Below, one piece after another: positions 851 through 61,230 of a DNA stretch of 64,000 bases. This DNA is from Octopus bimaculoides (lineage: Eukaryota), in contig NC_068987.1 in assembly GCF_001194135.2 (NCBI RefSeq), forward strand, positions 10,905,191 through 10,969,190. Direction: 5' to 3'. Numbering within the stretch: the first letter of the stretch is position 1; every line of letters starts with the position of its first letter. The notes beneath the pieces were generated by a model. The model was not told the origin of the DNA. It was given only the letters and a program-made list of their open reading frames with translations, and did no database searches. Both the position numbers and the translations under genes were made by a program.

Positions 851-1749
851 AATCTGTGCATGTGAAAAGTGGCAATATAGTGGTTGGCAGTGATGGTGGA
901 GGTGGGTATACTACGTTTTCTTCTGTGAATTGAAATAATGAAATAAGACGCTTTTTACATTTTGCTATTAATCATTTCACAGAAATGGATGTTTTCACAA
1001 AAGTTACTCGTGTTAGCAACAGCGATTTTATTATTGCCTCCCTAGTTTATATTATAATATTTTGAATTTTATTTTGTTTTCAACATAAGAGTTGAAATAA
1101 AATTGGTCTTTTTTTTTGTTTTTTTTTCAGTTTTCTCATTTTTTTTTTTTGCGGTATTTTCGTTTTTTCTGTATCTAAATTCTTAGTATTTCATTCTATT
1201 TTTCTTTGTGCATCTGAATTTTTTTCAATTAGTCTTCTGGTTATTTTTTTTTTTGTTATGTACTAAATTTTTGTTTTCTAGGAATTTTTTTTTTCATTTA
1301 GCTTATACGCTTCTCGTAATCTGTTTCATAAAATATCTCTATTTTCTGAATCAGTTTCAAAGTTTTGAAGTCTTATTTTAGCACACACGCTGATACGCAT
1401 GTGCACATGTTACTCGCATGCATGCATGTATGCATGTGATTATTTGGTCATCTTCTAAAATGTTTTTGTTATTAAAATTCCGAGGGAGACTGTGTGTGTC
1501 TGACAGATAATTGATCATAATTTTTCATCAGGCTGCATGTTAGGCAGTGAAGGTAGGATTGTGCTCGGACTTCAGTCAGATCATATATATATCATCATCA
1601 TCTTCATCATCATCATTGTAGTGCCTACCTTTCCATGCTTGCATTGGTTCTACAAAGTTTTATCGAAGCAGATTTTTTTCACACAGCTATCCTCGTCCAT
1701 TCTCACCAAATGACCATACGAGAGACGATTGCACTGGTATGGTCATTTG

Positions 1750-2360
1750 GCGAGAATAGCTGTGTGGAAAAGTGCCACAGCCTTGCGGTTGAGGGTGCCT
1801 GTGGAAGAGGTAGACCCAGAAAGACCTGGGATGAGGTGGTGAAGCACGACCTTCAAACATTAGGCCTCACTGAGGCAATGACTTGTGACCGAGACCTTTG
1901 GAAATATGCTGTGTGAGAAGACCCAACAAGACAATTGAGACCATAACCCGTGGCCTTTACCAGGGGTGTAGCCAGCCCACTTATGCGTACCTTTCCTTCT
2001 TTGGACACAAAACCCTGCTTGCGAAGACCTGTTGAGACAAGTGGAATCAAAATCGTAAATTGAACCAAATCCGTTGACTGGCACCCATGCCAGTGGAGTG
2101 CTAACAGCACCATCCGAGCAGGATTACTGCCAGAGCAGCAGTCTTACTCCTGTGCCGGTGGCACGTAAAAAGCACCATTTGAGCACGATCGTTTCCAGCT
2201 TCGCCTTACTGGCACTTGTGCCAGTGGCATGTAACCAGAACATTGGACTGACTCCTGTGCAGGTGGCATGTAAAAAACACCATTTGAGCGTGGCCGTTGC
2301 CAGTACCGCCGGACTGGCCCTTGTGCCGGTGGTACGTAAAAAGCACCCACTACACTCTCG
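1750..2360 (+). mobile_element. RTE-clade LINE fragment: ORF2 C-terminus plus 3' UTR with ~66-bp subrepeats
   Basis: Translation ENSCVEKCHSLAVEGACGRGRPRKTWDEVVKHDLQTLGLTEAMTCDRDLWKYAV* fits the RTE C-terminal RGRPRKTW..V..DL...DR..W motif; the UTR overlaps the (GAT)n-tailed copies at 6.6, 49.6 and 60.9 kb. Confidence 0.85.
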
Positions 2361-5231: not shown

Positions 5232-5617
5232 TACTCTTTTACTTGTTTCAGTCATTTGACTGCGGCCATGCTGGAGCACCGCCTTTAGTTGAGAAAATCG
5301 GCCCCCAGGACTTATTCTTTGTAAGCCTAGTACTTATTCTATCAGTCTCTTTTTGCCGAAAAACACACCAGCATCGTTTGACAAGCGATGGTGGGGGGGG
5401 GGGACAAACATAGACACACAAACACACATACATATGTATATATATATATATATATATACATATATACGACGGGCTTCTTTCAGTTTCCGTCTACTAAATC
5501 CATTGACAAGGATTTTGATGGCCCAGAGTTGTGGTAAGAAGACACTTGCCCAATGGATCACACGGTTGGACTGAACAAGAAACCTTGTGATTGGGAGACA
5601 AACTTCCGAACCACACA
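5232..5617 (-). mobile_element. SINE family A, near full length with internal (TA/CA) microsatellite
   Basis: Colinear with copies at 13.4, 20.1 and 56.5 kb. Confidence 0.88.
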
Positions 5618-5858
5618 TATTTATAGTTTGCCTTAAGCCTGCAGGAATATGAAGTGGGGAGGAACTACTTGGATTTTCAAGATACCTGTATTTAGTACGG
5701 TACCACTGGCATTCATTTTTGGCAACATGAAACGTCTTGCCGAAGGACACAATGTATCAAATCCACAGCCTACCAGTTGTGCTCCCAACACCTTTAACCA
5801 CAAAGCCCTAAAGCTTTCATATATGTGTTTGTAAGTGTGTGTGTGTGTGTGTATTCAG

Positions 5859-6567: not shown

Positions 6568-6848
6568 AGTGCCCCTGGACTGGCTCTTGTGCGGGTGGCA
6601 CATAAAATACACCATTTTGAGCGTGGCCATTGCCAGTACCGCTTGACTGGCCTTCGTGCGGGTGACACATAAAAGCACCCACTACACTCTCTGAGTGGTT
6701 GGCGTTAGGAAGGGCATCCAGCTGTAGAAACTCTGCCAAATCAGATTGGAGCCTGGTGTAGCCATCTGGTTTCACCAGTCCTCAGTCAAATCGTCCAACC
6801 CATGCTAGCATGGAAAGCGGACGTTAAACGATGATGATGATGATGATG
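6568..6848 (+). mobile_element. RTE 3' UTR (two subrepeats plus terminus), (GAT)n tail
   Basis: Shares subrepeats with 2140-2360 and the terminus with 3425-3578. Confidence 0.9.
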
Positions 6849-7640: not shown

Positions 7641-7812
7641 TGAATATGGGTACAGCGGTTTACTTTTAGCTAAGTACTTCTCTTGCAGTTGTCTAATTAG
7701 AAAGATGGAATCAATAGTGCTTCTGATAGGTGAGTGTGTGTATGTTTATATATATATATGTGTGTGTGTGTGTGCGTGTGTGTATGTGCATATATATGTA
7801 TATGTATGTATG

Positions 7813-10655: not shown

Positions 10656-10927
10656 GTTTAGTGAAGCGTTTGTTCATTTTGTGACATAATTAGCGCTGAG
10701 TGTGGAGCCATGGGTAGTGTATTTATGAGGGTTTGGATTTAAAGAATGTCTTTGTTTGCAACAAAAGGTTTTTCTTTCCATACAAAGAAAGAAGAAGGAA
10801 AGCACAGACTTTTGTGAGGTGTACGGAGAATGTGTGTCTGTTACTGTACGGGTGTATGGGAGACATGAATAGCAAAAGGCATAAAATGCCCTGTGAGTGA
10901 ACTTGGTTGGCAGAAACTGTATGGAAG

Positions 10928-11346
10928 GCAGCGAGCTGGCAGAAACGTTAGCACGCTGGGCGAAATGCTTAGCGGTATTACGTCTGCCATTACATTCTGA
11001 GTTCAAATTCCGCTGAGGTTGACTTTGCCTTTCATCCGTTTGGGTTTGATAAATTAAGTACCAGTTACGCACTGGGGTCGATGTAATCAACTTAATCCCT
11101 TTGTCTGTCCTTGTTTGTCCCCTCTATGTCTAGCCCCTTGTGGGCAATAAAGCAATAAGAAACGTTAGCATGCCGGGTGAAATGATTAGCGGTATTTCGT
11201 CTGCTGCTTCGTTCTGAGTTCAAATTCCGCCTGGGTCAACTTTGCCTTTCATCCTTTCGGGGGTCGATTAAATAAGTACCAGTTGTGCACTGGAGTCGAT
11301 GTAATCGACTTAATCCCTTTGTCTGTCCTTGTTTGTCCCCTCTATG
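10928..11346 (+). mobile_element. SINE family B1 tandem dimer following a family A fragment
   Basis: Head gcagcgagctggcagaaacgttagc, B-box ttctgagttcaaattcc, central gcctttcatcctttcggggtcgat; the second monomer is joined at AGAAAC (11158). Confidence 0.88.
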
Positions 11347-11599
11347 AAATACTGTTTAAGGCATACAAATTATTCACTTTGAATTTTTTCTTTGCAGCTA
11401 TTTAATAGAAACCTAAAATAAATTTCAATATATCTTAGATTATTTTTAGCGTTGAATATCTCATTGGTGTGTTTAAACAAATCAACCGTCATTTATTTCC
11501 ATTTCATATTTGAAATTTGCTATGAGAACACAATAGTTATATTTGCAATTAAAGAAATGGATTTGCTTCTATTCTTGGTTAATGATAAGCATAATCCTT

Positions 11600-12195
11600 T
11601 ATCTTTTAATCTCTTATTGTTTTAGTCATTGGACTGCAACCTTGCTGGCACTTATTTTTTTCAAACCTGGTTCTTATTCTCTTGATCTCTTTTGCTGAAC
11701 TGCTAATTTATGAGGACATAAACAAAACAATACCTGTTGTCAAGTAGTGGTGAAGGACAAACACAAAAATAAGCACACACATGTGTGATGGGCTTCTTTA
11801 AGTTTCTTATTCCTTTCTTGCTCACAAGGGGCTAAACATAAAGGAGACAAACAAGGACAGACAAAGGGATTAAGTTGATTACATCGACCCCAGTGCGTAA
11901 CTGGTACTTAATTTATCGACCCCGAAAGGATGAAAGGCAAAGTCGACCTCGGTGGAATTTGAACTCAGAACGTAAAGATAGACGAAATACCGCTAAGCAT
12001 TTCGCCCGGCGTACTAACATTTCTGCCAGCTCGCCCCCTTCTTTCAGTTTCTGCCCACCAAATGCACTCACAAGGCATTGGTTGACCTGGAGCTTATAGT
12101 AGAAGACACTTGCCCAAGGTGCCACTCAGTGGAACTGAACCCAAAACTAGGTACTTGGGAAGTTAATTTCTTACCACACAACCACACTTGCACCT
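11600..12195 (-). mobile_element. Diverged family A SINE interrupted by SINE B1 (11808-12037)
   Basis: 15-bp TSD cttcttt(a/c)agtttct at 11793-11807 and 12038-12052. Confidence 0.9.
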
Positions 12196-13449
12196 AAAAT
12201 GTTAAAAATTTTTTTTTACTTGTCTAAATCTTTCTAAATTGCTGCCTTTCTCAGGTATTTTTATACCTGGATACATCCCTCTTTCAGTATCTTTAAGTTC
12301 ACTGTTACGACTTGGCCTTGCAGCCTGCCAGCTCTACTGAAGATAATTTTCAACCATACCCTTTCTGAGTCAATGATTCTAGCCTGCATAAACGTAGACT
12401 GCCTTCTATAGAAGTGTTTCTCTGATATCTATGAAAAGAGATTCTATCGAGATTATCTGCTCTAATAATTTTCTAAGAAGTCACCATGCCTGCTTGGCCT
12501 GATCCTGGGAAACTTCTTTCACGATGAAATAGCTAAGTGATGGCTTGAATAATTGTGGGTTCTTCCTGGTAATAAACAGATATATATATTTTTTTTTCTT
12601 TCTTTGACACTAGCTACTTGCATACAAAAATTTTCTTTTCAGTAAATCTGTGTTTGATCTGAAAGGAATTGCTATCAAAAGCGTAATTAATGCTTGCACA
12701 TCATTGAATCCACTATCTTAACTTTCTTTTATCATAAACACCCAGATATCTAAGTACATGAATGAATACATACACAAACATGTCTGCATAATTGGGCATG
12801 TATGTTAATTCTTTGTGTTCTACAACAGCTGAAAACAACTATGTATTTTTAAGGGGTAAATTGTAAGTATTTGTTTTCATAGTTGATATTTCAGACATAA
12901 AGAAAATTATCTTTAGAGCATTCTTTGGCATCATTATTAATTCTTTACGGTAAATAGGGTTTTTGTCTCATGAAAATGTTTTAGAAAAATAATGTCTATT
13001 GTTAATATTTATTCCCTACACCTATTTCTATAAAGTATAATTTGTGGGTTATTTTAGATTGTAGATTATATTAACTCTTAAATCCTTATAGTGCATATGT
13101 TTTATAACTCTTTGGCTCCTGATAGAAACTGGGGATTATATTTAGATGCAGTTGGTCCAGTATAAATCATGAAAAATAGTTACTGAGAGTCATTGTGAGT
13201 CAACAACTATTTAAATGTTTGCAAGACTCAACGAAAATTTTAAAAAACAATCAATAAGTAAATGAGTGGAAAGCAAATCGGTGAGTGTGTTAAATAATAA
13301 GGCACTAAAAGAGAACGACTCTCCCCAAACACAATAAAATATGCTTCAACACACAAGTTCACATAAAGAATTTTGCAAACCAAATACAAAGACGAAATTA
13401 ATATAACTGAATTCTATCAAAGGAAGGAAAAGAAAATCTGGAGAAGTTC

Positions 13450-13828
13450 ATTTACTCTTTTACTTGTTTCAGTCATTTGACTGCGGCCATGCTGGAGCAC
13501 CGTCTTTAGTCGAGCAAATCGACCCCAGGACTTATTCTTTGTAAGCCTAGTATTTATTCTATCAGTCTCTTTTGCCAAACCGCTAAGTTACGGGGACATA
13601 AACACACCATCATCGGTTGTCAAGTGATGTTGGGGGAACACAGACACACAAACATATACACACACATATATACATATATGTATATGATGGGCTTCTTTCA
13701 GTTTCCGTCTACCAAATCCACTCACAAGGCTTTGGTCGGCCCAAGGCTATAGCAGAAGATACTTGCCCAAGGGGCTACGCAGTGGGACTGAACCCGGAAC
13801 CAAGCTTACCACACAGCCACTCCTACGT
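13450..13828 (-). mobile_element. SINE family A with a small head deletion
   Basis: Colinear with 20123-20517. Confidence 0.9.
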
Positions 13829-14574
13829 CTATGTTTATCTTAGTTTTAACATCTTTATTTTGCGAGAGGCATTTTTTCTGAAATATAAGCAATTGAACCT
13901 GGACATACAAGACAGCAAATAGGAGGTTGATATATTCATAAAACTTTACCTGTTGTATTGATAACCACACCCTACTGCATAGCTTGAGACGCATCATTAT
14001 CACTTTCTACTTGAAAGCTTTCATCTTCAACTGATATCTTCTAGTCATCTTCTAGATATGTTTGATCAAACTCTCATTGATCTTGATCAGAATCTTTCAA
14101 ACTTTGCTGTATCTTATCATTTATTAATAATCTACACATTTGTCTTTTCTCCCCAGAAGTGTTTGTGTGCAGTGAACTTTACGGTTGAAAACATGAGGGG
14201 TGGGGAAAAATAAACTAAAAATAACAGTTAAAATAGTACTTATCTGTGAACAGACATTTATTTGTAAACTGCCTTAATTCTTCACTGATGACCTGTCTTT
14301 ATTCTGATTAGCTGATCTATTTTTAATTTGACCTTATTTTATCATGAAGTTTACCAATTCCTGCTCTGTTGGGAATTTAACTGAGCATTAAGTCTGTAAC
14401 TCCCAGCAAACTTGGAATATGGCTCAAATGGGTTTTGATTTGTTTAGACTGTGAGATGTTCATTATTATAGATTAAATATTTAAATCTTTTATGCCTTAA
14501 AAGTTCATTAATAAATTGATTAATAGCATTTAACTGTTTTTTACTTAATGAAAATAAAAATTATTTCCACTTTC

Positions 14575-18499: not shown

Positions 18500-18636
18500 T
18501 CAAGAAATGCTGAAGTCTAACTGTGGAGGGGATGTGTGGAAAGGGTAGACCTAGAAAGATGTGGGACAAGGGATCTTCAGATGTTGGGCCTTACAGAGGA
18601 GATGACAAAGGTCTGAAACTTCTGGTGGTTTGCTGT
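18500..18636 (+). pseudogene. Decayed RTE ORF2 C-terminus
   Basis: SLTVEGMCGKGRPRKMWDK and DLQMLGLTEEMTK parallel the 1750-1916 peptide. Confidence 0.75.
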
Positions 18637-20122: not shown

Positions 20123-20517
20123 CTTTTTTACTCTTTTACTTGTTTCAGTCATTTGACTGCGGCCATGCTGGAGCACTGCCTTTAGTCGAGCAAATCGACC
20201 CCCAGGACTTATTCTTTGGAAACCTAGTACTTATTCTATCGGTCTCTTTTGCCAAACCACTAAGTTACAGAGACGTAAACACACCAGCATCGGTTGTCAA
20301 GCGATGTTGGGGGGACAAATACAGACACACACACATACATATATATACATATATATATGACGGGCTCCTTTCAGTTTCCGTCTACCAAATCCATTCACAA
20401 GACTTTGGTCAGCCCGAGGCTATAGCAGAAGACACTTACCGAAGGTGCCACGCAGTGGGACTGAACCTGGAACCATGTGGTTGGTAAGCAAGCTACTTAC
20501 CACACAGCCACTCCCGC
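20123..20517 (-). mobile_element. SINE family A, full length
   Basis: Complete head, microsatellite spacer and tail. Confidence 0.92.
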
Positions 20518-21039
20518 GCCTCAATATTTTAAACTATAATTTATTTACAGTAGTACACATCAATTTATCTGTCTGTCAATCCATCCATCCATCTGTGTGT
20601 GTGTGTGTGAACAAACAGCAGGCTTCCACATAGTTTCCATAATTTGCTCACAAGGCATGGATTAGCCCCGGGCTATAGTAGAAGACACTTGCCCAAGGTG
20701 TCAGGCAGTGGGTCTGAACCTGGAACCATGTGGTTGGTAAGCAAGCTGACACCAGAAGGACAAAAGTTTTAGTTAACTCCAAAAGGATTTGAACTCTGAC
20801 CAGTGAGGTACCAGCTGCCATTATGAACTGTATATTCAGGTATTCAGAAGTCTTGGCTTCTTTCCACGGTGTTCTTCATTAACCGTGTATAGTGAGAAAG
20901 TAGCAATGAGTTGTTGAATGCTGGTTTAATGAACACATCATGCTGGTTTTCTTCGTTTAAATGAAAAGTTGCTTAATTGTGGATAATGATCATATTAATT
21001 GAGTCGATCGGCAAAACAAGAAATTTAACGTCATGTCAA

Positions 21040-38264: not shown

Positions 38265-38738
38265 ACTTTTTCTTTTTCTTTTATTTGTTTCAGTCATTTG
38301 ACTACGGCCATGCTGTAGCACCGCCTTTAGTCGAACAAATTGACCCCACGACTTACTCTTTGTAAGCTTAGTAGTTATTCTATTGGTCTCTTTTGCCGAA
38401 CCGCTAATTGATGGGGACGTAAACACACCAGCATCGATTGTCAAGCGATGTTGGAGGGACAAACACACACACAAACATACATATACATACATANNNNNNN
38501 NNNNNNNNNNNNNNNNNNNNNNNNNNNNNNNNNNNNNNNNNNNNNNNNNNNNNNNNNNNNNNNNNNNNNNNNNNNNNNNNNNNNNNNNNNNNNNNNNNNN
38601 NNNNNNNNNNNNNNNNNNNNNNNNNNNNNNNNNNNNNNNNNNNNNNNNNNNNNNNNNNTATATATATATATATATATATATACACGATGGGCTTCTTTCA
38701 GGTTCCATCTTCCAAATCCACTCACAAGGCTTTGGTCC
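38265..38738 (-). mobile_element. SINE family A, head truncated, spans a gap
   Basis: Tail and body match family A. Confidence 0.88.
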
Positions 38739-38747
38739 TCTTAGGAA

Positions 38748-38985
38748 AACAAATATAGATGGGCTGGCCACATCATGCGGCTGAGGGGCAGTAAGTAGAT
38801 GGACAATCAGGTGGATGAAATGTACACCAAGACTATGGACAAGATCAAGAAGTTGACCAAAGACAAGACAGCGAGATGATCTCACCCACTACCTGGGGCC
38901 TACATGGCTACAACTGGCCAGAGACAGCTAGTGGTAGGAGTCCAGGAAGAGTTTCTCCTTCAGGAGTAATAAAGTCCTGGATAAA
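38748..38985 (+). pseudogene. RTE ORF2 C-terminal fragment (second lineage)
   Basis: KYRWAGHIMRL, then frameshifted TPRLWTRSRS*PKTR..DDLTHYLGPTWLQLARD, matching the RTE RWAGH...R..GRP..RW.DD...W...A.DR pattern. Confidence 0.75.
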
Positions 38986-39019
38986 GACGAGGATGAAACA
39001 CATACACACGCACACACAC

Positions 39020-39415
39020 ATGACAAGCTTCTTTCAGTTTCTTATTTCTTTATTGCCCCACAAGGGGCTAAACGTAGAGGGGACAAACCAGGACAGTCAA
39101 AGGGATTAAGTCAATTACATCGACCCCCAGCACTCAACTGGTGCTTAATTTATTGACTCCGAAAGGATAAAAGGCAAAGTCGACCTCGGTGGAATTTGAA
39201 CTCAGAACGTAGCAGCAGACGAAATACCACTAAGCATTTCACCCAGCATGCTAACACTTTTGCCAGCTCGCTGCCTTCTTTCAGTTTCTGTCTATCAAAA
39301 TTGTTCACAAGGTTTTGGTCAGTTTAGAGCTATAGAAGAAAACGCTTGGCTTGCAAGGATTGAAACTGAAACCACATAGGTAGAAAGCAAGCTCTTTAAC
39401 CACACAGCCATGCCT
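39020..39415 (-). mobile_element. Family A head interrupted by SINE B1 (39043-39274)
   Basis: Perfect 15-bp TSD cttctttcagtttct at 39028-39042 and 39275-39289. Confidence 0.92.
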
Positions 39416-39743
39416 GTATCTTTCTAAATAATCAACGAAAATATGTTGAAAATAGAAATGAGAAAAAAATTTAACTTTTAATAATAAATGAATTTCAAAG
39501 GACTGAATTGGTCAATTTATTAAATTTATTTATGAAATTAGCTAATAGTCAATTTAAACCATTTTCATATGATGGCCTTCTTTCACACAATTTATGTATT
39601 CCTAATCATTATTTCAAAGTGTTATTTCACTAATTGAGAATTATTAAAGAGCAGAATCCTTTGTAGATTTTGTCAAAATATATATTCAGTATGAAAATAA
39701 AGCTCTACATGAATTTCATATATATAAATTTATATTTATATAT

Positions 39744-40786: not shown

Positions 40787-41147
40787 CTATATGGATATAC
40801 TAATAATGATTTGGAGTAGTTTGTTTTATACATATATATATATAATAATATTAGGGACAAAATCCAAAATTACAGGTAAAAACTCAATATAATTACACCA
40901 AGGTAGAGATATAGAAAAAAGATGTTGAAAATGCACTAGGATTCATTTAGATTTTGTATCTTTTACTATTGAAAGACTTAACCAGTTTCATAGATTTTTC
41001 TGATTTTCAAAAGTTGAGGGGTTCAATCCCACTGCATGTCACCTTGGGCAAGTGTCTTCTACTATAGCCTCGGGCCGACCAAAGCCTTGTGAGCGGATTT
41101 GCTAGACAGAAACTGAAAGAAGCCCATCGTGTATATATATATATATG

Positions 41148-41184
<37 letters not shown>

Positions 41185-42696
41185 TGGTAATTAGTAAGGG
41201 ATTTCTCCCTGACTAACTTTTTAAAAATTGACTGCTTAGTTTATAATCACAAAGTAATTCCCCATCTCCAAAACAATTTGTGCTTTTTGGCTAGAATGTA
41301 AGATTCTGACAGCTTTAGGCTATTACTCTTCCTCGTTCATTGTTTAAAAGATACACATTTCTTGTCGGTTCTATTAACTTGTAATATGATGTTTAGTATC
41401 CAAGCTCAATCTCTTAGTTTTGAGGCTTGATTGTGTAATTATGTGATATACTTGCTCATTGCTTTAGAAAGAAAGTTTATAAAAATAGAATGTAAGAAAG
41501 CAGTAAACAAATCTCATATAAACAAGGGGCAACTCGTTGAAGACTCAAACATTAACATTTTATTTGTATATATGTAGATCTTGTTGAATAACATTAACAG
41601 CTATTCAAATGTGCACAGTTGGTGCATCTTTCCTGTTTGTATAACACGTTTCCGATGCGAGCATGAATTTTTTTTTTTATGATTCGAACAAATGCACTCT
41701 GTTCTTCAGGTTTTGGTTTTTTAATGTTACCATGATAAATATATACCTGGTGCAACGTCAGCTTTTAGGAATGCAGTAAATATAATAATCCATTTGGCTT
41801 GTTGTTGAAGTTAGTTTTCGTATCAAGCTACAAAAATGATAGTGTATTAGATGTACTGATTAACTGGTATGTTTTTCTCAAAACACTTTCTAGCTCATGT
41901 TACAAAAAAATACCTTTGTAAAATTTGGTTAAACATCAATTAGTATCTGTTTTACTGTATGGTTTTATAACCTGCAATGTTTTGTTTAGATTCTGCTGGA
42001 TTTCAACTGTATTATAAGCTAAATTTTTCATCAAAATTTTTCATCGTTTAACATCATCATTACCACTATTTAACATCTATTCTCCATACTGGCATAGGTT
42101 GGAATGATTCGAGAGAGCCTAGTGAGCCAGAGGTTTGCACTGAATTCCAATATCTACTTTGGCATGGTTTCTACTATTAGATGCCCATCCTAATGCCAAC
42201 CACTTTACAGAGTGTACTGGGTGCTTTTTACAGGGTCACTGGCTCCAGTGAGGTCACAAAGTAACTTGTAAGACAAGAAGATCCCTTGACTGAGGCAGTA
42301 GTGGGGGCTGGGGTATGGAGGGAAGTGGCTTTGTGCCAGGTGATGAGATACTAAAATATGATAGGGAGACAGGAACAGGTGTCTTGCTGTTGGGGAGATA
42401 CATAGTTAATTCAGTTAGAAGAGGAGGATGCTGGTGAAGATGTTATAGGAATCAATTAACCAAATGAAAAAAAAAGAAGTTTTTTTGTTTATAGGTAAAG
42501 TGATTTTATTAAAGAATTTCATAACTTGTATTAATTTTGGATGATATGTGTGGTTAAGAAGCTTGTGGTTTTGGGTTCAGTCTCATTGCATAGCACCTTG
42601 GACAAGTATATTCTACTATAGCCCAAGGTCAATCAATGCCTTGTGAGTGAATTTAGTAGAGAGAAACTGAGAGAAGCTTGTGTACACGCATATATA

Positions 42697-43648: not shown

Positions 43649-44041
43649 CTAACCCTTTAACATTTAAACCAGCCAATTCCGACCTAGTCCAGCCAAAATA
43701 ATCTACCTGTTTTATGCTCAAATAGGCCAGATCTGGCCTCGAGAATTTAACAGCTACCTCATCAAACTCTCAAAGCTACAAAATAATACATGATTAATTC
43801 AAAACAATGTGAATAAATAGGCATCACATTTACACTCTCTGAGATACTACACTCTCTGAGTGGTTGGCGTTAGGAAGGGCATCCAGCTGTAGAAACTCTG
43901 CCAAATCAGATTGGAGCCTGGTGTTGCTATCCGGTTTCACCAGTCCTCAGTCAAATCGTCCAACCCATGCTAGCATGGAAAGCAGACGTTAAACGATGAT
44001 GATGATGATTTAACAGAATAATTTAAATGCTAAAGGGTTAA
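43649..44041 (+). mobile_element. TTAA-type MITE (second family) interrupted by an RTE 3' end (about 43831-44009)
   Basis: Ends aaccctttaacatt / aatgctaaagggttaa; same family at 44921, 45717 and 58715. Confidence 0.8.
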
Positions 44042-48409: not shown

Positions 48410-48838
48410 TAATAGGAATAATGGTTTTATATTTTGGTACAAAGACAGAAATTTTGGGGAGGGGGTGAGTCAATTACATTGATGCCAGCGCTCAACTGGT
48501 ATTTGTTTTATTGACCTTGAGAGGGGGGAAAGGTGGAATTTGAACTCTGATGGGTGAAATAGTTACCGCTAAGCACAGTAACTATTCTGCTGGCTCGCCG
48601 CCTTAATTATAATAATAATAACCCTTTCTACTACACGCACAAGGCCTGAAATTTGGATAGGAGTGGGGGGAAGTCGGTTATATCGGCCCCAGTACTTAAC
48701 TGGTATTTAATTTATTGACCCTGAAAGGATGAAAGGCAAAGTCGACCATGGTGGAATTTGAACTCAGAACGTAGCGACGGGCAAAGTTCTGCTAAGCATT
48801 CCACCCAGTGTGCTAATGATTCTGCCAGCTTGCCACCC

Positions 48839-49571: not shown

Positions 49572-49973
49572 CGATGGCACCACCTTTCAAGCGTGATCGT
49601 TACCAGCGTCGCCTTCCTGGCACTTGTGCCGCAGCTTCGCGTTCCTGGCACTTGTGCCGGTGGAACGTGAAAAGTCATTCGAGTGACATCGTTGCCAGTG
49701 CTGCTGGACTGGCTCCTGTGCGGATGGCACATAAAATACACCATTTCTAGCGTGGCCGTTGCCAATACCGCCTGACTGGCCTTCGTGCCAGTGGCACGTA
49801 AAAGCACCCACTACACTCTCGGAGTGGTTGGTGTTAGGAAGGGCATCCAGCTGTAGAAACTCTGCCAAATCAGATTGGAGCCTGGTGTAGCCATCTGGTT
49901 TCACCAGTCCTCAGTCAAATCATCCAACCCATGCTAGCATGGAAAGCAGACGTTAAATGATGATGATGATGAA
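49572..49973 (+). mobile_element. RTE 3' UTR with subrepeats and (GAT)n tail
   Basis: Colinear with 60830-61230. Confidence 0.9.
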
Positions 49974-51450: not shown

Positions 51451-52354
51451 AATAAAACTTAGCAAACATCATTTGCAATATAAGTGAAAAGTGCTGTTGA
51501 TATTGGTACAGAGAATGAAAAGTTTCTTTAGCCTTCTTGCCGAAGTAAATACTATATATATATATTTTTTATATGTATTTATATATGTTTGTATCTTTTT
51601 AATTTTTTTTTTTTTTAATCTTTGAAACGAAGTTTTTCCACTAATTCTTACTTAAATTGGTATGTAAGAAGAGATCAGTAAGAAAAGTTAACCAGAAATT
51701 TTTTTTCTGCTTGGCTAAGATTACTTAATGAAAATCTTATATTAGTCAGAAAAGCAGTATAAACCGCTGTTAGCGCCGAAGAAAGAACACTTGCTAAAGA
51801 CGAATTTCAATTGATTCTCCAGTTAATCGTTCCTTCGTATGAATCTGCACTAGTTTTTAGCAGTGAACTAAATAAGAATAAGCTCCTTTGAGCTGATTGG
51901 AATTTCAGATTCTGACGAAATAAAACATTCCATGCATGATGCCACATGTTTCATCCAAACTGTACTTTCTATGACTCTTTCCAATCTTCAATTTGGTCCG
52001 TTTAATCTTTGATTTTGCATGTGTGTGCGTGTGCATAAGCTATGTATCTGTGTGTGCAAATATAGATATATATACATACATACATGCATCTATATATATA
52101 TGTATATGTGTTTGTATATCTATGTGTCTGTCTGTCTCTCTGTCTATTTATCTGTCTATCTATCTGTCTGTCTAGGTGTGGCTTTGTGGTAAGAAGTTTG
52201 GTTTTAAACCACATAGTTTTGGGTTCAGTCCTACTGAATGGAAGACTGACATTAATTGATGAAGATGATGATTGAAGGGCTATTTACAGTGTTTTGTGAC
52301 TGTATGAGGCCCTATTTTCTGAACAGTTTTACATATTAATATTCTAACATATAT

Positions 52355-52790
52355 TCTACTCTAAGCACAAAGCCCGAAATTTTGGGGGAGGGGGCCAGTT
52401 GATTAGATCGACTCCAGTACACAACTGGTGCTTAATTTATTTGACTTTGAAAGGATGAAAGGCAAAGTCGACCTCGGTGGAATTTGAACTCAGAACATAA
52501 AAAGACAGATAAAATACCACTAAGCATTTCAGCCGGTGTGCTAACATTTCTGCCATCTCGTTGCCTTAATATTCTAACATATATCAAAGGTGGTGAGCTG
52601 GCAGAATCGTTAACAAAACCAAACTAGATGTTAAGCAGTATTTCATTTGTATTAACATACTGAGTTCAAGTATGGCGAAGGTCGACTTTGCCTTTCTTCC
52701 TTTCAGGATCAATAAAATAAGTACCAGTTGGTCATTGAAGATGCCGGCCTTGTGCCAAAATTCGAAACCATTATTCTAGCATATATTACT
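52355..52790. mobile_element. Head-to-head SINE B2 pair (minus 52355-52565, plus about 52587-52790)
   Basis: The first copy has a 19-bp TSD ttaatattctaacatatat at 52336-52354 and 52566-52584. Confidence 0.88.
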
Positions 52791-53273: not shown

Positions 53274-53861
53274 CTTTTCCCACAACTACCCGGTTATTTG
53301 CATCAATTTTGCTATAGTTGTTATAGTGAGATGTAAGGGTTTTTACTATAAAATTTCATCTAAATGAAACTATATATTTCTGACAATCCTTTAAACTCCT
53401 CATGCAAACCCATTCTCTCATTTCTTTTCTCTCTTTTTTGTTTTATCGTTTGTTTTTGTTTTCACTTCAACTGCTAGCATAATAATAATAATAACAGACC
53501 ACGACTACGATCACTACCGTCTTGTATCCATGGCTACTGTTAACTACTTACATTGTACCTTTTCGCCTTTGTTTGCTGTAGCCCTTAAGTTTTATACTTA
53601 CTTGTATCTGTTGTCCTGACCTGAATATCATTTATCTACACAGTCCTTTCTTGATTTCAGGTTTTTAGTTTTTTTCTTCTTCACTTTTTCCGTTCACTTG
53701 ACTCAAGAAATTTCAAATAAGGATAAGCTATGAAAATCTTTATTGCAATTATTCAATCTTATTAAAATTCTAAACCCACAAAATTAAGGCTTCAACATCA
53801 TCATCATCATCATCACCACCACCACTGTCACCATCATCATCATCATCATTAATATTGCAGC

Positions 53862-54060
53862 AAGCTGGCGGAAATGTTAGCACACCAGGCGAATTGCCTT
53901 AACGGCATTTCGTCTGTTTTTATGTTCTGAGTTCAAATTCTGCCAAGGTCGACTTTGTTGATAAATTAAGTACCAGTAAAACACTGGAGTTGATGTAATT
54001 GACTATCCCCCTCCCACCAAATTTCAGGCTTTGTGTCTTTAGTAGAAAGGATTATTATTA

Positions 54061-54128
<68 letters not shown>

Positions 54129-54410
54129 GGCGGTGAGTTGGCAGAATCGTTAGCACACTGGAAGAAATGCTTAGTGGTATTTCACCCATTGCTACATTCT
54201 GATTTCAAATTCTGCTGAGGTCAGCTTTGTCTTACATCCTTTCAGGGTTGATAAATTAAGTACCAGTAAAACACTGGGGTCAATGTGATTGACTCATCAC
54301 CTGCCCTCCAAATTGCTGCCCTTGTGGCAGAATTTGAAACCATTACGCCGGGCGAAATGCTTAGCAGTATTTCGTCTGTCTTTACGTTCTGAGTTCAAAT
54401 TCCGCCCAGG
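53862..54410 (+). mobile_element. Cluster of two full and one partial SINE B copies around (ATT)n
   Basis: Repeated ttctgagttcaaatt and gataaattaagtaccag motifs. Confidence 0.85.
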
Positions 54411-54850
54411 TCTGCATGGGTCAGACGGAATTTGTTGAGGCAGATTTTCCATGACCTGATGCCCTTCCTGTCACCAATCCTCAACTCTTTCCAAGCAATG
54501 TAATATTTTTTCCATAGTGAGAGCTAGACATGTTTTCTCACAGAAGACTGGAGATGAACACCCCTGCTTGTATAAGGGTGATGCTCATTTACAACCACTG
54601 TGTGATGTCCAGACATAGATGCACACAAACATACACACACACATCATTGTATGTATATACACATACGTATATGTGTCACTGTGTGTATCTGCATGATAGG
54701 CTTCTTTCACTTTCCATCTGCCAAATCCACTCACGAGGCTTTGATTGGTCCAGAGCTATAATATAAGACATTTCCCCAAGTTAATGCACAATGGGACTGA
54801 ACCCTAGACCACATGTTTGGGAAGCAAACTTCTTAACTGCTGAACCATGT
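54411..54850 (-). mobile_element. SINE family A2
   Basis: gatgcccttcc tail motif plus A-type head gggactgaacc. Confidence 0.78.
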
Positions 54851-55372: not shown

Positions 55373-56534
55373 CCAACTTAAAAATAGGACTCTTTAAATA
55401 GTACAGTCAGAGGTATGTATGGCATGAACAAAGTTGGAATGGTCATGGCTAGAATGTCTTTAACCATAGGTCTGCTTGATCATGGTTGATCAGGGGAACA
55501 AACAACAACAGTAACAACACAAAAAGATGCACAACCCTTCAACACTTCCCTCTCCTACCACCCCTGCACACGATGATCGTGTATTCAATCTGAATTATTT
55601 ATTGTTCCTGTTTTATAATACATTGACTGTTAATTGTTGCCAGGTGCTGTTATTCACTTGGATAAATAAATTATACAATCATTAGCAATAGTCACATGAC
55701 ATAAGTCTGAAATTACTTCCAAACCACTGTTTACAATGACTCTGTATATATATATATATTGATTATAGGCATTACCATCATCATCGTCATCATCGTCATC
55801 ATTTTGCATTTAGAGGTTATTCGAATGAACAGTGATGTTTCTTTCTCCCTTGTAACAAAAGAGAGAGAGGAGACAGAGAGAGAGGAGACAGAGAGAGAAG
55901 GGGGGAGGACGGGAGGGTGGGAGATCTTAGCTGTGTTAAAGTCATCTCCGAGATTTTGTGTCTTTCTTTGTCTATTTGTCACCCTGGGTAACTGTCGGCC
56001 ACAGGTGTCTCCTCTATTAATTCTTTCTCTCTATGTTCCTACTACCCATTACCACTCTCTCTTAGATACCTTTAAACATGTTACTGTCCTCTTTGTCTAA
56101 TGGAGTTTATTCTAGCCGTTGTATTTTCTGTATTTGTGTGTGTGTATGTGTGGTTTTTTTTCTTCAGTAAATCACTCGTCTTTCTCATAAACAGGTCCAC
56201 TGCTGGGAGAATATATACTCATTCCTTCTGGATTGTCATTGTGTATACTCCTTTCTCAACCTCTCTGACACCATAATAAATTACAAATTATCTATAAGCC
56301 AACAAGAGAGCTTTCTATGCAGTTACCTGCCTGCTTGACCAGCTAAAATAGCAACCAAATCTCATTCAAATCACATCATACACTAATAATAAAAAAAGAA
56401 AGGAAAGTCACTTTAAATATTCTGTTGTGTCTGGGGAGGGTCATTATATCAATATTATTAACACACACACTGGTTCAATTCCACTCTTTTATTATTAGTC
56501 AATTGGTTAATTATTCAACTAAGTAACTGATTAC

Positions 56535-56742
56535 TCTCTCTTTTACTTCTTTCAGTCATTTGGCTGCGGCCATGCTGGAGCACCGCCTTTAGTCGAGCAA
56601 ATCGACCCCAGGACTTATTCTTTGTAAGCCTAGTACTTATTCTATCGGTCACTTTCGCCGAACTGCTAAGTTACGGGGACGTAAACACACCAGCATCGGT
56701 TGTCAAGCGATGTTGGGGGCACAAACATATACACACACACGC

Positions 56743-56773
<31 letters not shown>

Positions 56774-56936
56774 CGACGGGCTTCTTTCAGTTTCCATCTA
56801 CCAAATCCACTCACAAAGCTTTGGTCGGCCCAAGGCTATAGTAGAAGACACTTGCCCAAGGTGCCACGCAGTGGGACTGAACCCGGAACCATGCAGTTGG
56901 GAAGCAAGCTTCTTACCCACACAGCCACTCCTGCAC
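56535..56936 (-). mobile_element. SINE family A, full length
   Basis: Complete and close to the family consensus. Confidence 0.93.
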
Positions 56937-58714
56937 CTATATTTTCAACAATTTTAAAAACATTCACAAATTAACATGATTATGTATTAGTTTGGACAGC
57001 ATGGATTAAATATAAGTTGATAATTTCAGTGCCAAGATTTTACAGTATTTTTCATGTTCTAATGATATTCAGATGACATATTATTCCCATGTCTATTTTT
57101 ATTTATTTTAATGTTCTTTCTTTTAGTTCCATAGCTTGGCTCTTAAATCTGAGCCTTTATGTAGCAGTAGCCACTAATAACACATTTCCTTAAACAACCT
57201 GGTCTAATATTGGTTCTTAATACTAAAGTACATTTTCTCTCACCGAAATGCTTTTTAGCAATTTCAACACTTTTCTTTTCCCTTTTGTTTACGATCAAAT
57301 TCTGATATCCTCGAATAGAAGCACACTTCATTTCGTTGTTGTTTGATATCTTTTTTAAGCTCTTATCTCTGTCTTTCCCCCCGCTGTTCTCGTTCCTCCT
57401 GGATATTATGTTGTCAAATAAGATTTGCACTATTCTGGATCTGTAAGAGCTCCATCGTCGATCTTTATGTCTTACTAACTAATAATTTCATACTGTATCG
57501 CAAGCGAGTTGCTCTCATAAATGAATATTTCTAACTTCTTTTTTTTTTTTTTTTTAGATGGCTATTTTAAGTACTCAGCTATTTCTACACCTATCTATCA
57601 TAATTTAAATGTTTAGAATAACTAGTTTGATTTCCCTTTCTTTTCTTGTATTTTTTAAAAGGAATCTTTCACATTTTTGGGTATTTTTTCCCTTAAATAA
57701 TCTACAGCCAGTTGTCAAAATTTTGAGTATTTCATTTCATATGTATGTCTTCTTCTAAACGTATTCTAATTCCTATTATCAGTTAACTTAACTTAGTGTC
57801 CACCACACTTTATAAACCATTAACAACACGGATCTTATCACTTGGTCTTCATATTCTATGTCTTGAACATGTATTTAAGAACATTATCTTTCATAGGTTG
57901 GTTTGACTGCTTTATAGAAGTCTCAAGAATAGGTGGATATTAAAGCACTTCTTTTTCTTTTCCCTCCAACACCTCCTTTGTCGTGATGGGTTTAATAGTT
58001 GTGCAAATTTTTATATTTTTCATTTCATGCAACTGAAGCAAATGGAGTAATACACTAAAAGCTTTGGTGATGAGAGAAGAACTTAAACTCATGGCATTTC
58101 AGACACTCTTTGTCTTTTACTGTTTCTCTTTTACTTCTTTCTGTCATTGGACTGTGGCCATACTGGAGCATCACCTTAACAGTTTTAGTCGAACACATCA
58201 ACTCCAATGCTTTTTTTTTAAAGTTATCCTGTTGGTCTCTTTTGCTGAACCACAAGGTTACCTAGACATAAACAAACTAACAGCAGTTGTCAAGCAGAGC
58301 AAGGGAGGGTAAACACATAGGCACAAAGACACACACACACACACAAACAACAGGCTTCCACACAGTTTCCATCATAAGGCATTGGTCAGCTCCACTGTCT
58401 GCTTCAATATGGCCTCTATATTTGGATGCCCTTTCTAATGCCAATCACTTCATAACCTTTACTGGATGTTTTTTCTTTTGTGCCACCTAGCACTAACGAG
58501 TATTGAAATTGCTAAACACCTCGCAAGACTATGAACACTTAGCAGGGTTGGATCAGCTTTATGCCAGGGGTGAGGGTATAAAATATGATAGAAGCAGTAG
58601 GGGCAGAGCAAATTCTTGTTGGATCTCAAATTCTGATCATTGGAGACTGTTGACTACCATATTAATCATTCTATCATTGTCTATGTGCACACAATGCACA
58701 TATTACGCACTTAC

Positions 58715-60829: not shown

Positions 60830-61230
60830 TCGGCTTGCAAAGATCTGTTGGGGCAAGCAAAAGCAAAATTGTGATGGCACCTGTGCCCAGCATTGCCTTC
60901 CTGGCACTTGTGCCTGTGACACGTGTAAAGGAATTCGAGCGAGATCGTTGCCAGTGCCGCTGGACTGGTTCCTGTGCAAGTGGAATGTAAGATATACCAT
61001 TTTGAGCATGGCCGTTGACAGTACCGCCTGACTGGCCTTCGTGCCGGTGGCACGTAAAAGCACCCACTACACTCTCGGAGTGATTGGCATTAGGAAGGGC
61101 ATCCAGCTGTAGAAACTCTGCCAAATCAGATTGGAGCCTGGTGTAGCCACCTGGTTCACCAGTCCTCAGTCAAATCATCAAACCCATGCTAGCATGGAAA
61201 GCGGACGTTAAACGATGATGATGATGATGA
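60830..61230 (+). mobile_element. RTE 3' UTR, longest (GAT)n-tailed copy
   Basis: Starts at cttgcaaagatctgttggggcaag, matching about 2020 of the ORF-linked copy. Confidence 0.9.

What the first reader, a model, noticed from the sequence alone, without database searches (positions are those of the whole stretch)
39020..39300. SINE B1 repeatedly inserts at one exact nucleotide inside SINE A (SINE-on-SINE targeting)
Seen: at 39.0 kb and 11.8 kb a full B1 copy interrupts a family A copy with the same 15-bp TSD (AGAAACTGAAAGAAG in element orientation). At 10928 a third B1 starts at the same junction (...agaaactgtatggaag|gcagcgagc). Every B1 copy in the window is at this site or joined to such a copy, whereas B2 copies sit in (ATT)n or AT-rich sites. 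The A hosts differ strongly from each other while the B1 copies are well preserved. Inference: sequence-specific targeting, perhaps because the B1 tail (aaagaaataagaa) anneals to the nicked AGAAAC target. This would let one SINE parasitise the most abundant SINE as a safe harbour. A composite A[B1] element amplifying as a unit is the alternative.
Basis: partly seen in the sequence, partly recalled or inferred. Interest (0 to 1): 0.8.

Follow-up and report, generated by a model that had tools for sequence, protein, structure and literature searches.

The report
One SINE repeatedly nested inside another
A short retrotransposon (B1) sits at exactly the same nucleotide of an older, very abundant one (A) three times in 64 kb; at least two of these look like separate insertions, so B1 probably homes to that site, which is a known kind of behaviour with a new target.

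Summary
The window is SINE-rich eukaryotic DNA; I think it is octopus, from memory only. B1 occurs four times and nowhere else. Three full copies lie in the same orientation directly after ...CAGAAACTG(A)AAGAAG of family A: 39039-39274(-), 11804-12037(-) and 10928-11161(+). A fourth, truncated copy is fused to the tail of the third.

The two copies that can be checked carry the 15-bp direct repeat AGAAACTGAAAGAAG. Four of those bases are ambiguous with the B1 tail. Uninterrupted A copies carry the motif once.

Independent insertion is supported for 39k versus 12k:
- The hosts are 60-75% identical while the inserts are 86% identical.
- Similarity drops exactly at the repeat on both sides.
- Host 12k is closer to uninterrupted A copies than to host 39k.

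The 10.9k and 12k copies share 89% identity from 43 nt inside A through B1. They could be copies of one composite or carry a 5' extension.

The best reading is target-site-specific retrotransposition. The endonuclease of an unidentified partner LINE probably sets the site, helped by 4-6 nt of tail-to-target pairing. The closest precedent is SINEU-3 in Mariner-N4_AMi of crocodilians.

I could not run the genome-wide test because no collection here holds this genome. One outside B1-like copy is not in A. Interest is moderate.

The parts
39039..39274 (-). Full-length B1 SINE copy. It runs from the head gcagcgagctggca... to the tail ...gggcaataaagaaataagaa and is nested in an A copy.
   Evidence: Junctions located. 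BLAST inventory. The B1-specific 3' region matched.
39275..39289 (-). Upstream copy of the 15-bp direct repeat AGAAACTGAAAGAAG. This is host A sequence.
   Evidence: Exact match. Junction.
39028..39042 (-). Downstream copy of the direct repeat. Its first 4 nt (39039-39042) double as the end of the B1 tail.
   Evidence: Exact match. Junction.
39275..39425 (-). 5' part of the old, strongly diverged host A copy. It has the tRNA-like head and the CORE-like region and ends in the motif.
   Evidence: Alignments. It is about 62-75% identical to every other A copy.
38995..39038 (-). 3' continuation of host A (actgaaagaagcttgtcatgtgtgtg...(TG)n). It abuts a LINE 3' fragment that lies on the + strand.
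   Evidence: The variant 'gaagcttgt' is shared with the uninterrupted copy A42568.
11804..12037 (-). Full-length B1 copy nested in a long-form A copy.
12038..12052 (-). Upstream copy of the direct repeat AGAAACTGAAAGAAG.
11793..11807 (-). Downstream copy of the direct repeat, AGAAACTTAAAGAAG (1 mismatch). It overlaps the B1 tail by 4 nt.
12038..12196 (-). 5' part of host A. It is 83% identical to the uninterrupted copy at 7812.
11650..11803 (-). 3' part of host A: ...gaagcccatcaca(TG)n followed by the 'D' region of long-form A.
   Evidence: the D query matches 11781-11650.
10869..10927 (+). A-derived segment that ends ...ggcagaaactgtatggaag, directly upstream of the third B1. It is either a decayed or truncated host, or a 5' extension carried along with B1.
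10928..11161 (+). Full-length B1 copy, the least diverged of the three.
11162..11346 (+). B1 copy lacking its first ~18 nt and its last ~35 nt. It is fused to the tail of the preceding B1 at aataagaa|acgttagc. The unbroken B1 head reads ggcagaa|acgtt at that point.
41108..41122 (+). An unoccupied, exact AGAAACTGAAAGAAG site in an uninterrupted A copy (...gctagacagaaactgaaagaagcccatcgtg). It serves as a paralogous 'empty site'.

Best explanation
B1 is a subfamily of the tRNA-like B SINEs. It has the same head as B2 and a different 3' end, ...ccccttgtgggcaataaagaaataagaa. It integrates by target-primed reverse transcription at one defined site of the older A SINE, which looks like a CORE-SINE.

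Proposed steps:
- The bottom strand is nicked opposite C|AGAAACTG.
- The exposed ...TTCT-3' end can pair with the terminal AGAA (possibly AGAAAC) of the B1 RNA.
- The top strand is nicked 15 nt downstream, after ...AAAGAAG.
- This produces the constant 11-15 bp duplication and the constant orientation.

Shown: the nested anatomy, the duplication, the constant site and orientation, and that at least two hosts were already different A copies when B1 arrived.

Inferred: the specificity comes mainly from the endonuclease or DNA-binding part of an unidentified partner LINE, with tail-to-target pairing as a helper. Also inferred: only old A copies that read AGAA rather than GGAA at the site were hit. 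Either B1 was active before the young A burst, or AGAA is required.
For: Site and distribution:
- There are four B1 copies in the window. Three are at the identical A position in the same orientation, and the fourth is joined to one of them.
- The 15-mer is exact on both sides at 39k and differs by 1 mismatch at 12k. Uninterrupted A copies carry it once.

Hosts are older than inserts (12k versus 39k):
- B1 is 86.3% identical (K2P 0.156). The host 5' parts are 75.5% identical with 21 gap columns (K2P 0.31).
- Fisher test on mismatches gives p=0.0018, or 3e-7 when gaps are counted.
- Stepwise identities: host 40 nt upstream 60%, 15-mer 100%, B1 ends 80-83%, host 40 nt downstream 64%.
- Host 12k is 83% identical to the uninterrupted A7812 but only 71% to host 39k. 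The hosts therefore do not form one lineage.
- B1 is at least as CpG-rich as A: 14 CpG in 234 nt against 4 in the 155-nt copy A7812. Slower decay of B1 is therefore not expected.

Where B1 ends:
- The B1 3' end is fixed independently of A by the B1|B1 junction (aataagaa|acgttagc) and by the outside copy L001 (...cgaaataa|atatatt).
- All four window 3' junctions read AGAA|AC, and the unbroken targets read CAGAA|AC.

Tail and target change together:
- The sister subfamily B2 ends in (ATT)n and sits in (ATT)n or AT-rich DNA.

Precedent:
- SINEU-3 inserts into Mariner-N4_AMi with a fixed 16-bp duplication (PMC4494074).
- Tail-to-target pairing is described for RTE, R1Bm, I factor and R2Ol (PMC6007223).
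Against: - Only three junctions from one 64-kb window were available. No genome-wide sample could be obtained.
- The 10.9k and 12k copies align continuously at 89% from 43 nt inside A to the B1 tail, and they lie about 640 bp apart in inverted orientation. This pair may share a composite ancestor.
- All three hosts share the minority state AGAA, against GGAA in 11 of 13 other A copies. Common descent would also explain that.
- The only B1-like copy found outside the window (L001) is flanked by (ATT/GTT)n and a B2 3' fragment, not by A.
- No partner LINE with the B1 tail was found in the window.
- Microhomology is only 4-6 nt, and other CAGAAAC(TG) sites are empty.
- The window is a gapped draft assembly. 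Collapse of young repeats could make the B1 copies look slightly more alike than they are.
Confidence: 0.55

Rival explanations
1. Hitch-hiking composite. B1 entered one A master copy once (or very few times), and the unit A[B1] was then amplified from the A promoter. The shared site and the shared 'duplication' would then be inherited, not re-created.
For: - 10.9k versus 12k gives one continuous alignment of 279 nt at 89% that crosses the A/B1 junction.
- All hosts have the rare AGAA state, and the 12k and 10.9k hosts share AATGCC and GGCAG.
- Orientation is always the same.
- Composite SINEs are common (general knowledge). Kojima had to test exactly this alternative for SINEU-3.
Against: - The 12k and 39k hosts are 60-75% identical against 86% for their B1 inserts (p=0.0018).
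- Host 12k is closer to uninterrupted A copies (83%) than to host 39k (71%).
- The sequence just 3' of the repeat differs in ways that match other A variants: cccatc against cttgtc.
- The 43-nt similarity of the 10.9k and 12k hosts is no higher than that of host 12k to the uninterrupted A42568, about 83%.
- The B1|B1 junction and L001 show that B1 moves without A flanks.
Confidence: 0.27
2. RNA-level or recombinational chimeras. The A and B1 sequences would be joined by reverse-transcriptase template switching, or by ectopic recombination or gene conversion, at the short identity GGCAGAAAC shared by the A site, the B1 head and the B1 tail/flank. No endonuclease-directed insertion into genomic A copies would be involved.
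For: - The string (g)gcagaaac occurs in the 12k and 10.9k hosts and at B1 positions 11-19.
- The B1|B1 fusion lies exactly at agaa|ac, as expected for a microhomology-guided switch.
- L001 joins the B1 tail to an internal point of a B2 at ataa|at.
Against: - A template switch gives one junction, not an interruption with both A halves present and an 11-15 bp direct repeat.
- There is no homology between the B1 5' end (gcagcgagc) and ...aaagaag to guide the upstream junction, yet it is identical in three copies.
- Gene conversion would homogenise adjacent A sequence, but similarity stops at the repeat.
Confidence: 0.1
3. Coincidence or assembly artefact. The junctions would be chance placements of B1 in a genome saturated with A, or chimeric contigs of a gapped short-read assembly.
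For: - The window has 12 N gaps.
- The 39k composite lies on a 1.1-kb contig between two gaps.
- A is very dense, about 17 copies in 60 kb.
Against: - The same nucleotide, the same orientation and a matching duplication are seen in separate contigs with different flanks.
- The chance per random oriented insertion is about 1.3e-4.
- A and B1 share at most 9-10 nt, which is too little to mis-join reads.
Confidence: 0.03

Closest known systems
SINEU-3 (and SINEU-1/2) inserting into the DNA transposon Mariner-N4_AMi in crocodilians, mobilised by Tx1-Mar LINEs (Kojima 2015, PMC4494074)
   Same: - A SINE is found almost only inside one other abundant transposable-element family.
- It sits at a fixed position and in a fixed orientation, with a fixed long duplication (16 bp there, 11-15 bp here).
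- Tandem SINE copies occur at the site.
- Some copies carry a 5' extension of host sequence.
- The same rival, hitch-hiking on the host, had to be excluded.
   Different: - The host there is a DNA transposon. Here it is another SINE.
- The SINE heads there derive from snRNA. Here they are tRNA-like.
- The partner LINE is known there (Tx1-Mar, same target). Here it is unknown.
- That case rests on hundreds of copies (313 of 347). This one rests on four copies in one window.
Target-specific non-LTR retrotransposons that use other transposons or microsatellites as targets: Tx1 in Tx1D, Tx1-9_AMi in Harbinger elements, Kibi/Koshi in (TC)n/(TTC)n, and the R4 clade (PMC4494074 and PMC4640811)
   Same: - Integration is into a defined sequence of a multicopy, dispensable target.
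- Specificity is attributed mainly to the element's endonuclease.
- A repeat annotation of Octopus vulgaris lists recently active L1-Tx1 and Dong-R4 families (PMC13282606).
   Different: - Those are autonomous LINEs. No such LINE was seen at the A site in this window.
- That B2 in (ATT)n reflects a Dong-like partner is only a lead from my memory of Dong's (TAA)n target.
RTE-type integration, in which the microsatellite-like 3' end of the RNA pairs with the nicked target (Nishiyama and Ohshima 2018, PMC6007223)
   Same: - The first bases of the duplication equal the last bases of the element.
- A change of tail (B2 against B1) goes with a change of target.
   Different: - Pairing there is 1-2 nt in animals and gives a loose preference, not one site.
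- The T-stretch signature about 10 nt upstream is only weakly visible here (ttt/tttt at -12 to -8).
Composite or dimeric SINE families, and insertion of Alu into the A-rich tails or linkers of older Alus (general knowledge, not checked here)
   Same: Two SINE modules lie in one unit, and SINE-into-SINE insertion is frequent.
   Different: - In a composite family both modules have one age. Here the hosts are about twice as diverged as the inserts.
- Alu-in-Alu insertion follows a loose TTAAAA preference, not one nucleotide with a 15-bp motif.

Membership tests
Target-site-specific SINE (SINEU-3 type) | The large majority of copies genome-wide are flanked by the same host element at the same position. 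| tested here: inconclusive
   In the window 4 of 4 copies fit. The one outside copy (L001) is not in A. No genome collection with this organism was reachable.
Target-site-specific SINE (SINEU-3 type) | Constant target-site duplication and constant orientation relative to the host. | tested here: met
   AGAAACTGAAAGAAG lies on both sides at 39k (exact) and at 12k (1 mismatch). Orientation is the same in all three copies. The third copy has lost its 3' side.
Target-site-specific SINE (SINEU-3 type) | Insertions are independent events, not hitch-hiking with the host. | tested here: met
   Met for 39k against 12k: hosts 60-75% identical against 86% for the inserts, and the hosts do not group together. 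Not settled for 10.9k against 12k.
Target-site-specific SINE (SINEU-3 type) | A partner LINE with the same 3' tail and the same target preference. | tested here: not met
   The B1-specific 3' region occurs only in the four B1 copies. The LINE fragments in the window (1635-1916, 18523-18600, 38741-39000) have other 3' ends. A 64-kb window is a very weak test.
Composite (dimeric) SINE family A[B1] | Both modules have the same age, and the flanking modules form one lineage. | tested here: not met
   K2P is 0.31 for hosts against 0.156 for B1. Host 12k is nearer to uninterrupted A copies than to host 39k.
tRNA-derived SINE (families A and B) | A head with a tRNA-like sequence or fold and pol III A and B boxes. 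| tested here: inconclusive
   Box-like motifs are visible by eye: A has tggctgtgtgg...ggttcagtccc, and B has gctggcagaa...gagttcaaattcc. ARAGORN and Rfam found nothing, even at E<=1.
CORE-SINE (family A) | A central CORE domain shared with MIR, OR1/OR2 and others. | not tested
   The stretch ccttgggcaagtgtcttc resembles the MIR core as I remember it. The papers name an octopus CORE-SINE (OR1 in one, OR2 in the other). No reference sequence was available to align.

The most novel reading that the evidence does not exclude
B1 is an obligate homing SINE. Its still unidentified partner LINE, Tx1-like or of another sequence-specific type, cuts a ~15-bp site that exists almost only inside the most abundant SINE of the genome. 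One SINE lineage would then live inside another. This would be the first SINE-in-SINE site-specific system, and the first target-specific SINE/LINE pair described in a mollusc.
Probability: 0.35. Interest if true: 0.6.

Novelty: new member of a known kind. Interest (0 to 1): 0.4.

Why it matters
If it holds genome-wide, it points to a sequence-specific LINE in cephalopods that nobody has pinned down. Its recognition site would be a defined 15-bp motif.

It would add a case in which a SINE uses another SINE as a harmless landing pad. That bears on how a genome with more than 10% SINEs tolerates continued retrotransposition.

It also has a practical side. Repeat libraries may wrongly list A[B1] as a separate family. 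Nested copies also give a relative dating of SINE bursts.

It does not open a new field, because target-specific SINEs inside other transposons are already documented (SINEU-3).

Tried and rejected
Attempts to get more genomic copies:
1. I searched the protein collections with peptides from spurious reading frames across B1. The antisense-frame profile gave one hit (P0001, contig L001). The sense-frame profile gave none.
2. I used a LINE C-terminal reading frame of the window to reach annotated loci. It gave one hit (P0002, L002), which holds no A or B1.
3. Pattern scans of metagenome contigs (twice) and genome contigs (once) with B1-specific and B-head patterns gave 0 hits.
4. A full-text search for five SINE k-mers in the paper library gave 0 papers.
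5. Literature searches for nested SINE targeting in octopus found nothing specific.

Other checks:
6. ARAGORN and Rfam on the window and on 10.7-12.3 kb found no tRNA or other family.
7. Pfam on ten window reading frames found no real gene.

Readings considered and rejected:
- That B1 carries an A-like tail of its own (...actgaaagaagccc...). The B1|B1 junction and L001 both end B1 at ...ataa(gaa).
- That a simple CAGAAAC(TG) motif is sufficient. There are 13 and 3 empty sites respectively.
- That the end of long-form A (aaatgACTGAAAGAAGtaaaag), which has the same 11-mer, is also a target. None of about 10 such ends carries B1.
- An 8-nt repeat (aaggcata, 10876-10883 and 11358-11365) as a duplication flanking the whole 10.9k unit. 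The upstream copy lies inside A-homologous sequence, so this is probably chance.

Full report
WHAT THE WINDOW IS. The 64 kb are AT-rich (about 21-42% GC) and broken by 12 runs of N. They are packed with short interspersed repeats, microsatellites and LINE fragments. Ten reading frames tested against Pfam gave no real gene. The repeat sequences look to me like those of an octopus genome. That is my recollection and I did not verify it. It fits published reports of about 11.6% SINEs and of active Dong-R4, CR1, L1-Tx1 and RTE LINEs in Octopus vulgaris (PMC13282606).

THE THREE REPEAT FAMILIES.
- Family A has about 17 copies. It has a tRNA-like head and a stretch resembling the CORE domain, then ...gccttgtgagtggatttggtagacGGAAACTGAAAGAAGcccgtcgta, then a (TA/TG)n run.
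- In many A copies a further ~200-nt part follows, ending ...aaatgactgaaagaagtaaaagag. I call this 'long-form A'.
- Family B has another tRNA-like head.
- Subfamily B2 ends ...gccttgtgcctagagtagaaagg(ATT)n.
- Subfamily B1 has a different 3' region of about 70 nt, ending ...ccccttgtgggcaataaagaaataagaa.
- ARAGORN and Rfam do not recognise either head.

CHECK OF THE OBSERVATION. The B1-specific region occurs at four places only.
- At 39039-39274 (-) and at 11804-12037 (-), a full B1 interrupts an A copy in the same orientation. The A sequence resumes on the far side.
- AGAAACTGAAAGAAG is present on both sides. It is exact twice at 39k and has one mismatch in the downstream copy at 12k.
- The last four bases of the B1 tail (AGAA) are also the first four of the downstream repeat. 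The duplication is therefore 11-15 bp.
- Uninterrupted A copies have the motif once. One of them, at 41108-41122, has it exactly and serves as a paralogous empty site.
- At 10928-11161 (+) a third full B1 starts after ...ggcagaaactgtatggaag, the same relative position in an A-derived segment.
- That third copy is followed directly by a B1 lacking its first ~18 nt (aataagaa|acgttagc) and, at 11346, its tail. No downstream A part remains.
- B2 copies lie in (ATT)n or AT-rich DNA. One has an exact 19-bp duplication.

With about 16 A sites in 60.5 kb, the chance that a random oriented insertion hits the site is about 1.3e-4.

INDEPENDENT INSERTIONS OR ONE COMPOSITE? This is the key question. The window gives a partial answer.

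For 12k against 39k:
- The B1 inserts are 86.3% identical (K2P 0.156).
- The host 5' parts are 75.5% identical with 21 gap columns (K2P 0.31), and the host 3' parts are 67% identical.
- The difference is significant: p=0.0018 on mismatches with the motif excluded, and 3e-7 when gap columns are counted.
- In 40-nt steps the identity runs 60% (host), 100% (15-mer), 80% and 83% (B1 ends), 10/11 (downstream repeat) and 64% (host). Similarity drops exactly at the edges of the repeat on both sides.
- Just 3' of the repeat the two hosts read cccatc and cttgtc. Each variant is also found in uninterrupted A copies.
- Host 12k is 83% identical to the uninterrupted copy at 7812 but only 71% (plus 14 gaps) to host 39k. 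The hosts do not form a lineage of their own.
- B1 has at least as many CpG sites as A, so it should not decay more slowly.

A single composite ancestor is therefore rejected for this pair. At least two separate B1 acquisitions occurred at the same nucleotide.

For 10.9k against 12k the picture differs:
- One continuous alignment of 279 nt at 89% runs from 43 nt inside A through the whole B1.
- The two copies lie about 640 bp apart in inverted orientation.
- The 43-nt host similarity is no higher than that between host 12k and the uninterrupted copy at 42568, about 83%. An independent hit in the same old A subfamily therefore remains possible.
- A copy of a composite, or of a master read from inside A, cannot be excluded. 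Kojima describes such 5' extensions for SINEU-2B.

WHERE B1 ENDS, AND WHAT THE JUNCTIONS SHARE.
- Two junctions that do not involve A fix the B1 3' end at ...aataa(gaa). One is the B1|B1 fusion in the window. The other is a B1-like copy on an ENA metagenome contig (L001), which ends ...cgaaataa|atatattaagt and continues into a B2 3' fragment. The A-like sequence after B1 is therefore host, not part of B1.
- All four 3' junctions in the window read AGAA|AC.
- The corresponding unbroken targets read CAGAA|AC, both in the three A hosts and in the B1 head itself (ctggcagaa|acgtt).
- All three hosts have AGAA where 11 of 13 other A copies have GGAA. By my own count, a Fisher test on this gives p about 0.02. 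It is confounded with age, because the young A copies all read GGAA.
- The end of long-form A carries the same 11-mer ACTGAAAGAAG but is preceded by aaatg. None of about 10 such ends holds a B1.
- Thirteen other CAGAAAC sites and three other CAGAAACTG sites are empty.
- The short pairing between the B1 tail and the nicked target is thus consistently present. It cannot by itself explain the choice of one site.

MECHANISM.
- Shown: nested insertion with a duplication of constant sequence, constant orientation, and at least two independent events.
- Inferred: target-primed reverse transcription, with the first nick opposite C|AGAA and the second 15 nt downstream after AAAGAAG.
- Precise nicks on both strands are typical of sequence-specific LINE endonucleases. 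PMC4494074 and PMC4640811 say that target choice is mainly set by the endonuclease.
- The terminal AGAA(AC) of the RNA probably helps priming, as described for RTE, R1Bm, I factor and R2Ol (PMC6007223).
- The sister subfamily B2, with an (ATT)n tail in (ATT)n targets, shows tail and target changing together.
- The B1 tail (AAAGAAaTAAgAa) resembles the end of long-form A (AAAGAAgTAAaAg). The two may share a LINE partner.
- No LINE with that tail is in the window.

COMPARISON WITH WHAT IS KNOWN. The nearest precedent is SINEU-3 of crocodilians (PMC4494074).
- There, 313 of 347 copies lie in the DNA transposon Mariner-N4_AMi with a 16-bp duplication.
- Tandem copies occur at the site.
- The partner is the Tx1-Mar LINE group, which has the same target.
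- The hitch-hiking alternative was excluded with 5'-truncated copies.

Tx1 in Tx1D and Tx1-9_AMi in Harbinger elements are autonomous examples. The present case works like these but differs in host (another SINE), SINE type (tRNA-like) and phylum. Its partner LINE is unknown. I file it as a probable new member of the known kind 'target-specific SINE', not as a new kind.

LIMITS.
- The decisive genome-wide table could not be made.
- Two peptide searches built from B1 reading frames gave one and no hit. A LINE reading frame gave one irrelevant contig. Three DNA scans of public collections gave nothing.
- The one outside copy is not in A, which warns against reading 'always in A' from four copies.
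- The window is a gapped draft assembly.

VERDICT.
Recurrent, site-specific insertion of B1 into A is the best explanation (about 0.55).
- Composite amplification remains a serious rival for part of the copies (about 0.27).
- Interest is moderate (0.4). It is a neat case that can be checked in an afternoon with the genome in hand, and it has a clear published precedent.

Noticed in passing
window 56450-56943 (-); also 13455-13830 (-), 20131-20526 (-), 5234-5640 (-), 38269-38493 (-): Many A copies continue past their internal (TA/TG)n run into a further ~200-nt conserved part, ending ...aaatgactgaaagaagtaaaagag. Other A copies stop at the microsatellite. Either A is a two-part SINE with an internal microsatellite, or a second element regularly joins the A tail. 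The end of the long form repeats the 11-mer of the B1 target.
   Followed up: partly
window 52355-52565 (-), flanks 52336-52354 and 52566-52584: A B2 copy without an (ATT)n tail is flanked by an exact 19-bp target-site duplication (TTAATATTCTAACATATAT on the + strand). This fixes the B2 ends and shows that B2 is not strictly confined to (ATT)n.
   Followed up: yes
window 48460-48836 (-) and 53857-54412 (+): B2 copies stand head to tail, joined only by (ATT)n. At 54330-54412 a 5'-truncated B head follows directly after a B2 3' end. B elements appear to insert repeatedly into the tails of earlier B elements.
   Followed up: partly
window 10885-11163 (+) versus 11802-12079 (-): The two neighbouring A/B1 units form an inverted repeat of 279 nt at 89% identity with a spacer of about 640 bp. 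If transcribed, it could fold into a long double-stranded RNA.
   Followed up: no
window 1635-1916 (+), 18523-18600 (+), 38741-39000 (+): These are fragments of LINE C-terminal reading frames (...GRGRPRKTWDEVVKHDL...DRDLWKYAV; ...WAGHIMRL...). The one at 38.7-39.0 kb ends ...ggataaagacgaggatgaaac and abuts, in opposite orientation, the (TG)n of the A host that carries B1.
   Followed up: partly
window 49709-49967, 6574-6838, 60965-61222, 43846-44003; L002 1155-1402: A further repeat family (...ggaagggcatccagctgtagaaa...catgctagcatggaaagcagacgttaaatgatgatgatga) ends in (GAT)n. On the outside contig L002 it lies about 240 nt downstream of the LINE 3' end that matches window 1720-2071. It may be the tail of that LINE or a SINE derived from it.
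   Followed up: partly
L001 1-543 (ENA metagenome contig): This is a B1-like copy (84.6-85.4% identical to the window copies) outside A. Upstream lie (ATT/GTT)n and then an inverted A head. Downstream the B1 tail is joined to the 3' half of a B2 at ataa|atatattaagt. This suggests that B1 also joins to other B elements by short homology.
   Followed up: partly
window 10876-10883 and 11358-11365: The 8-mer aaggcata occurs just upstream of the clearest A homology and again 11 nt after the truncated end of the second B1. It is probably chance, because the upstream copy lies within weaker A homology. It could be a trace of how the 10.9k unit arose.
   Followed up: partly
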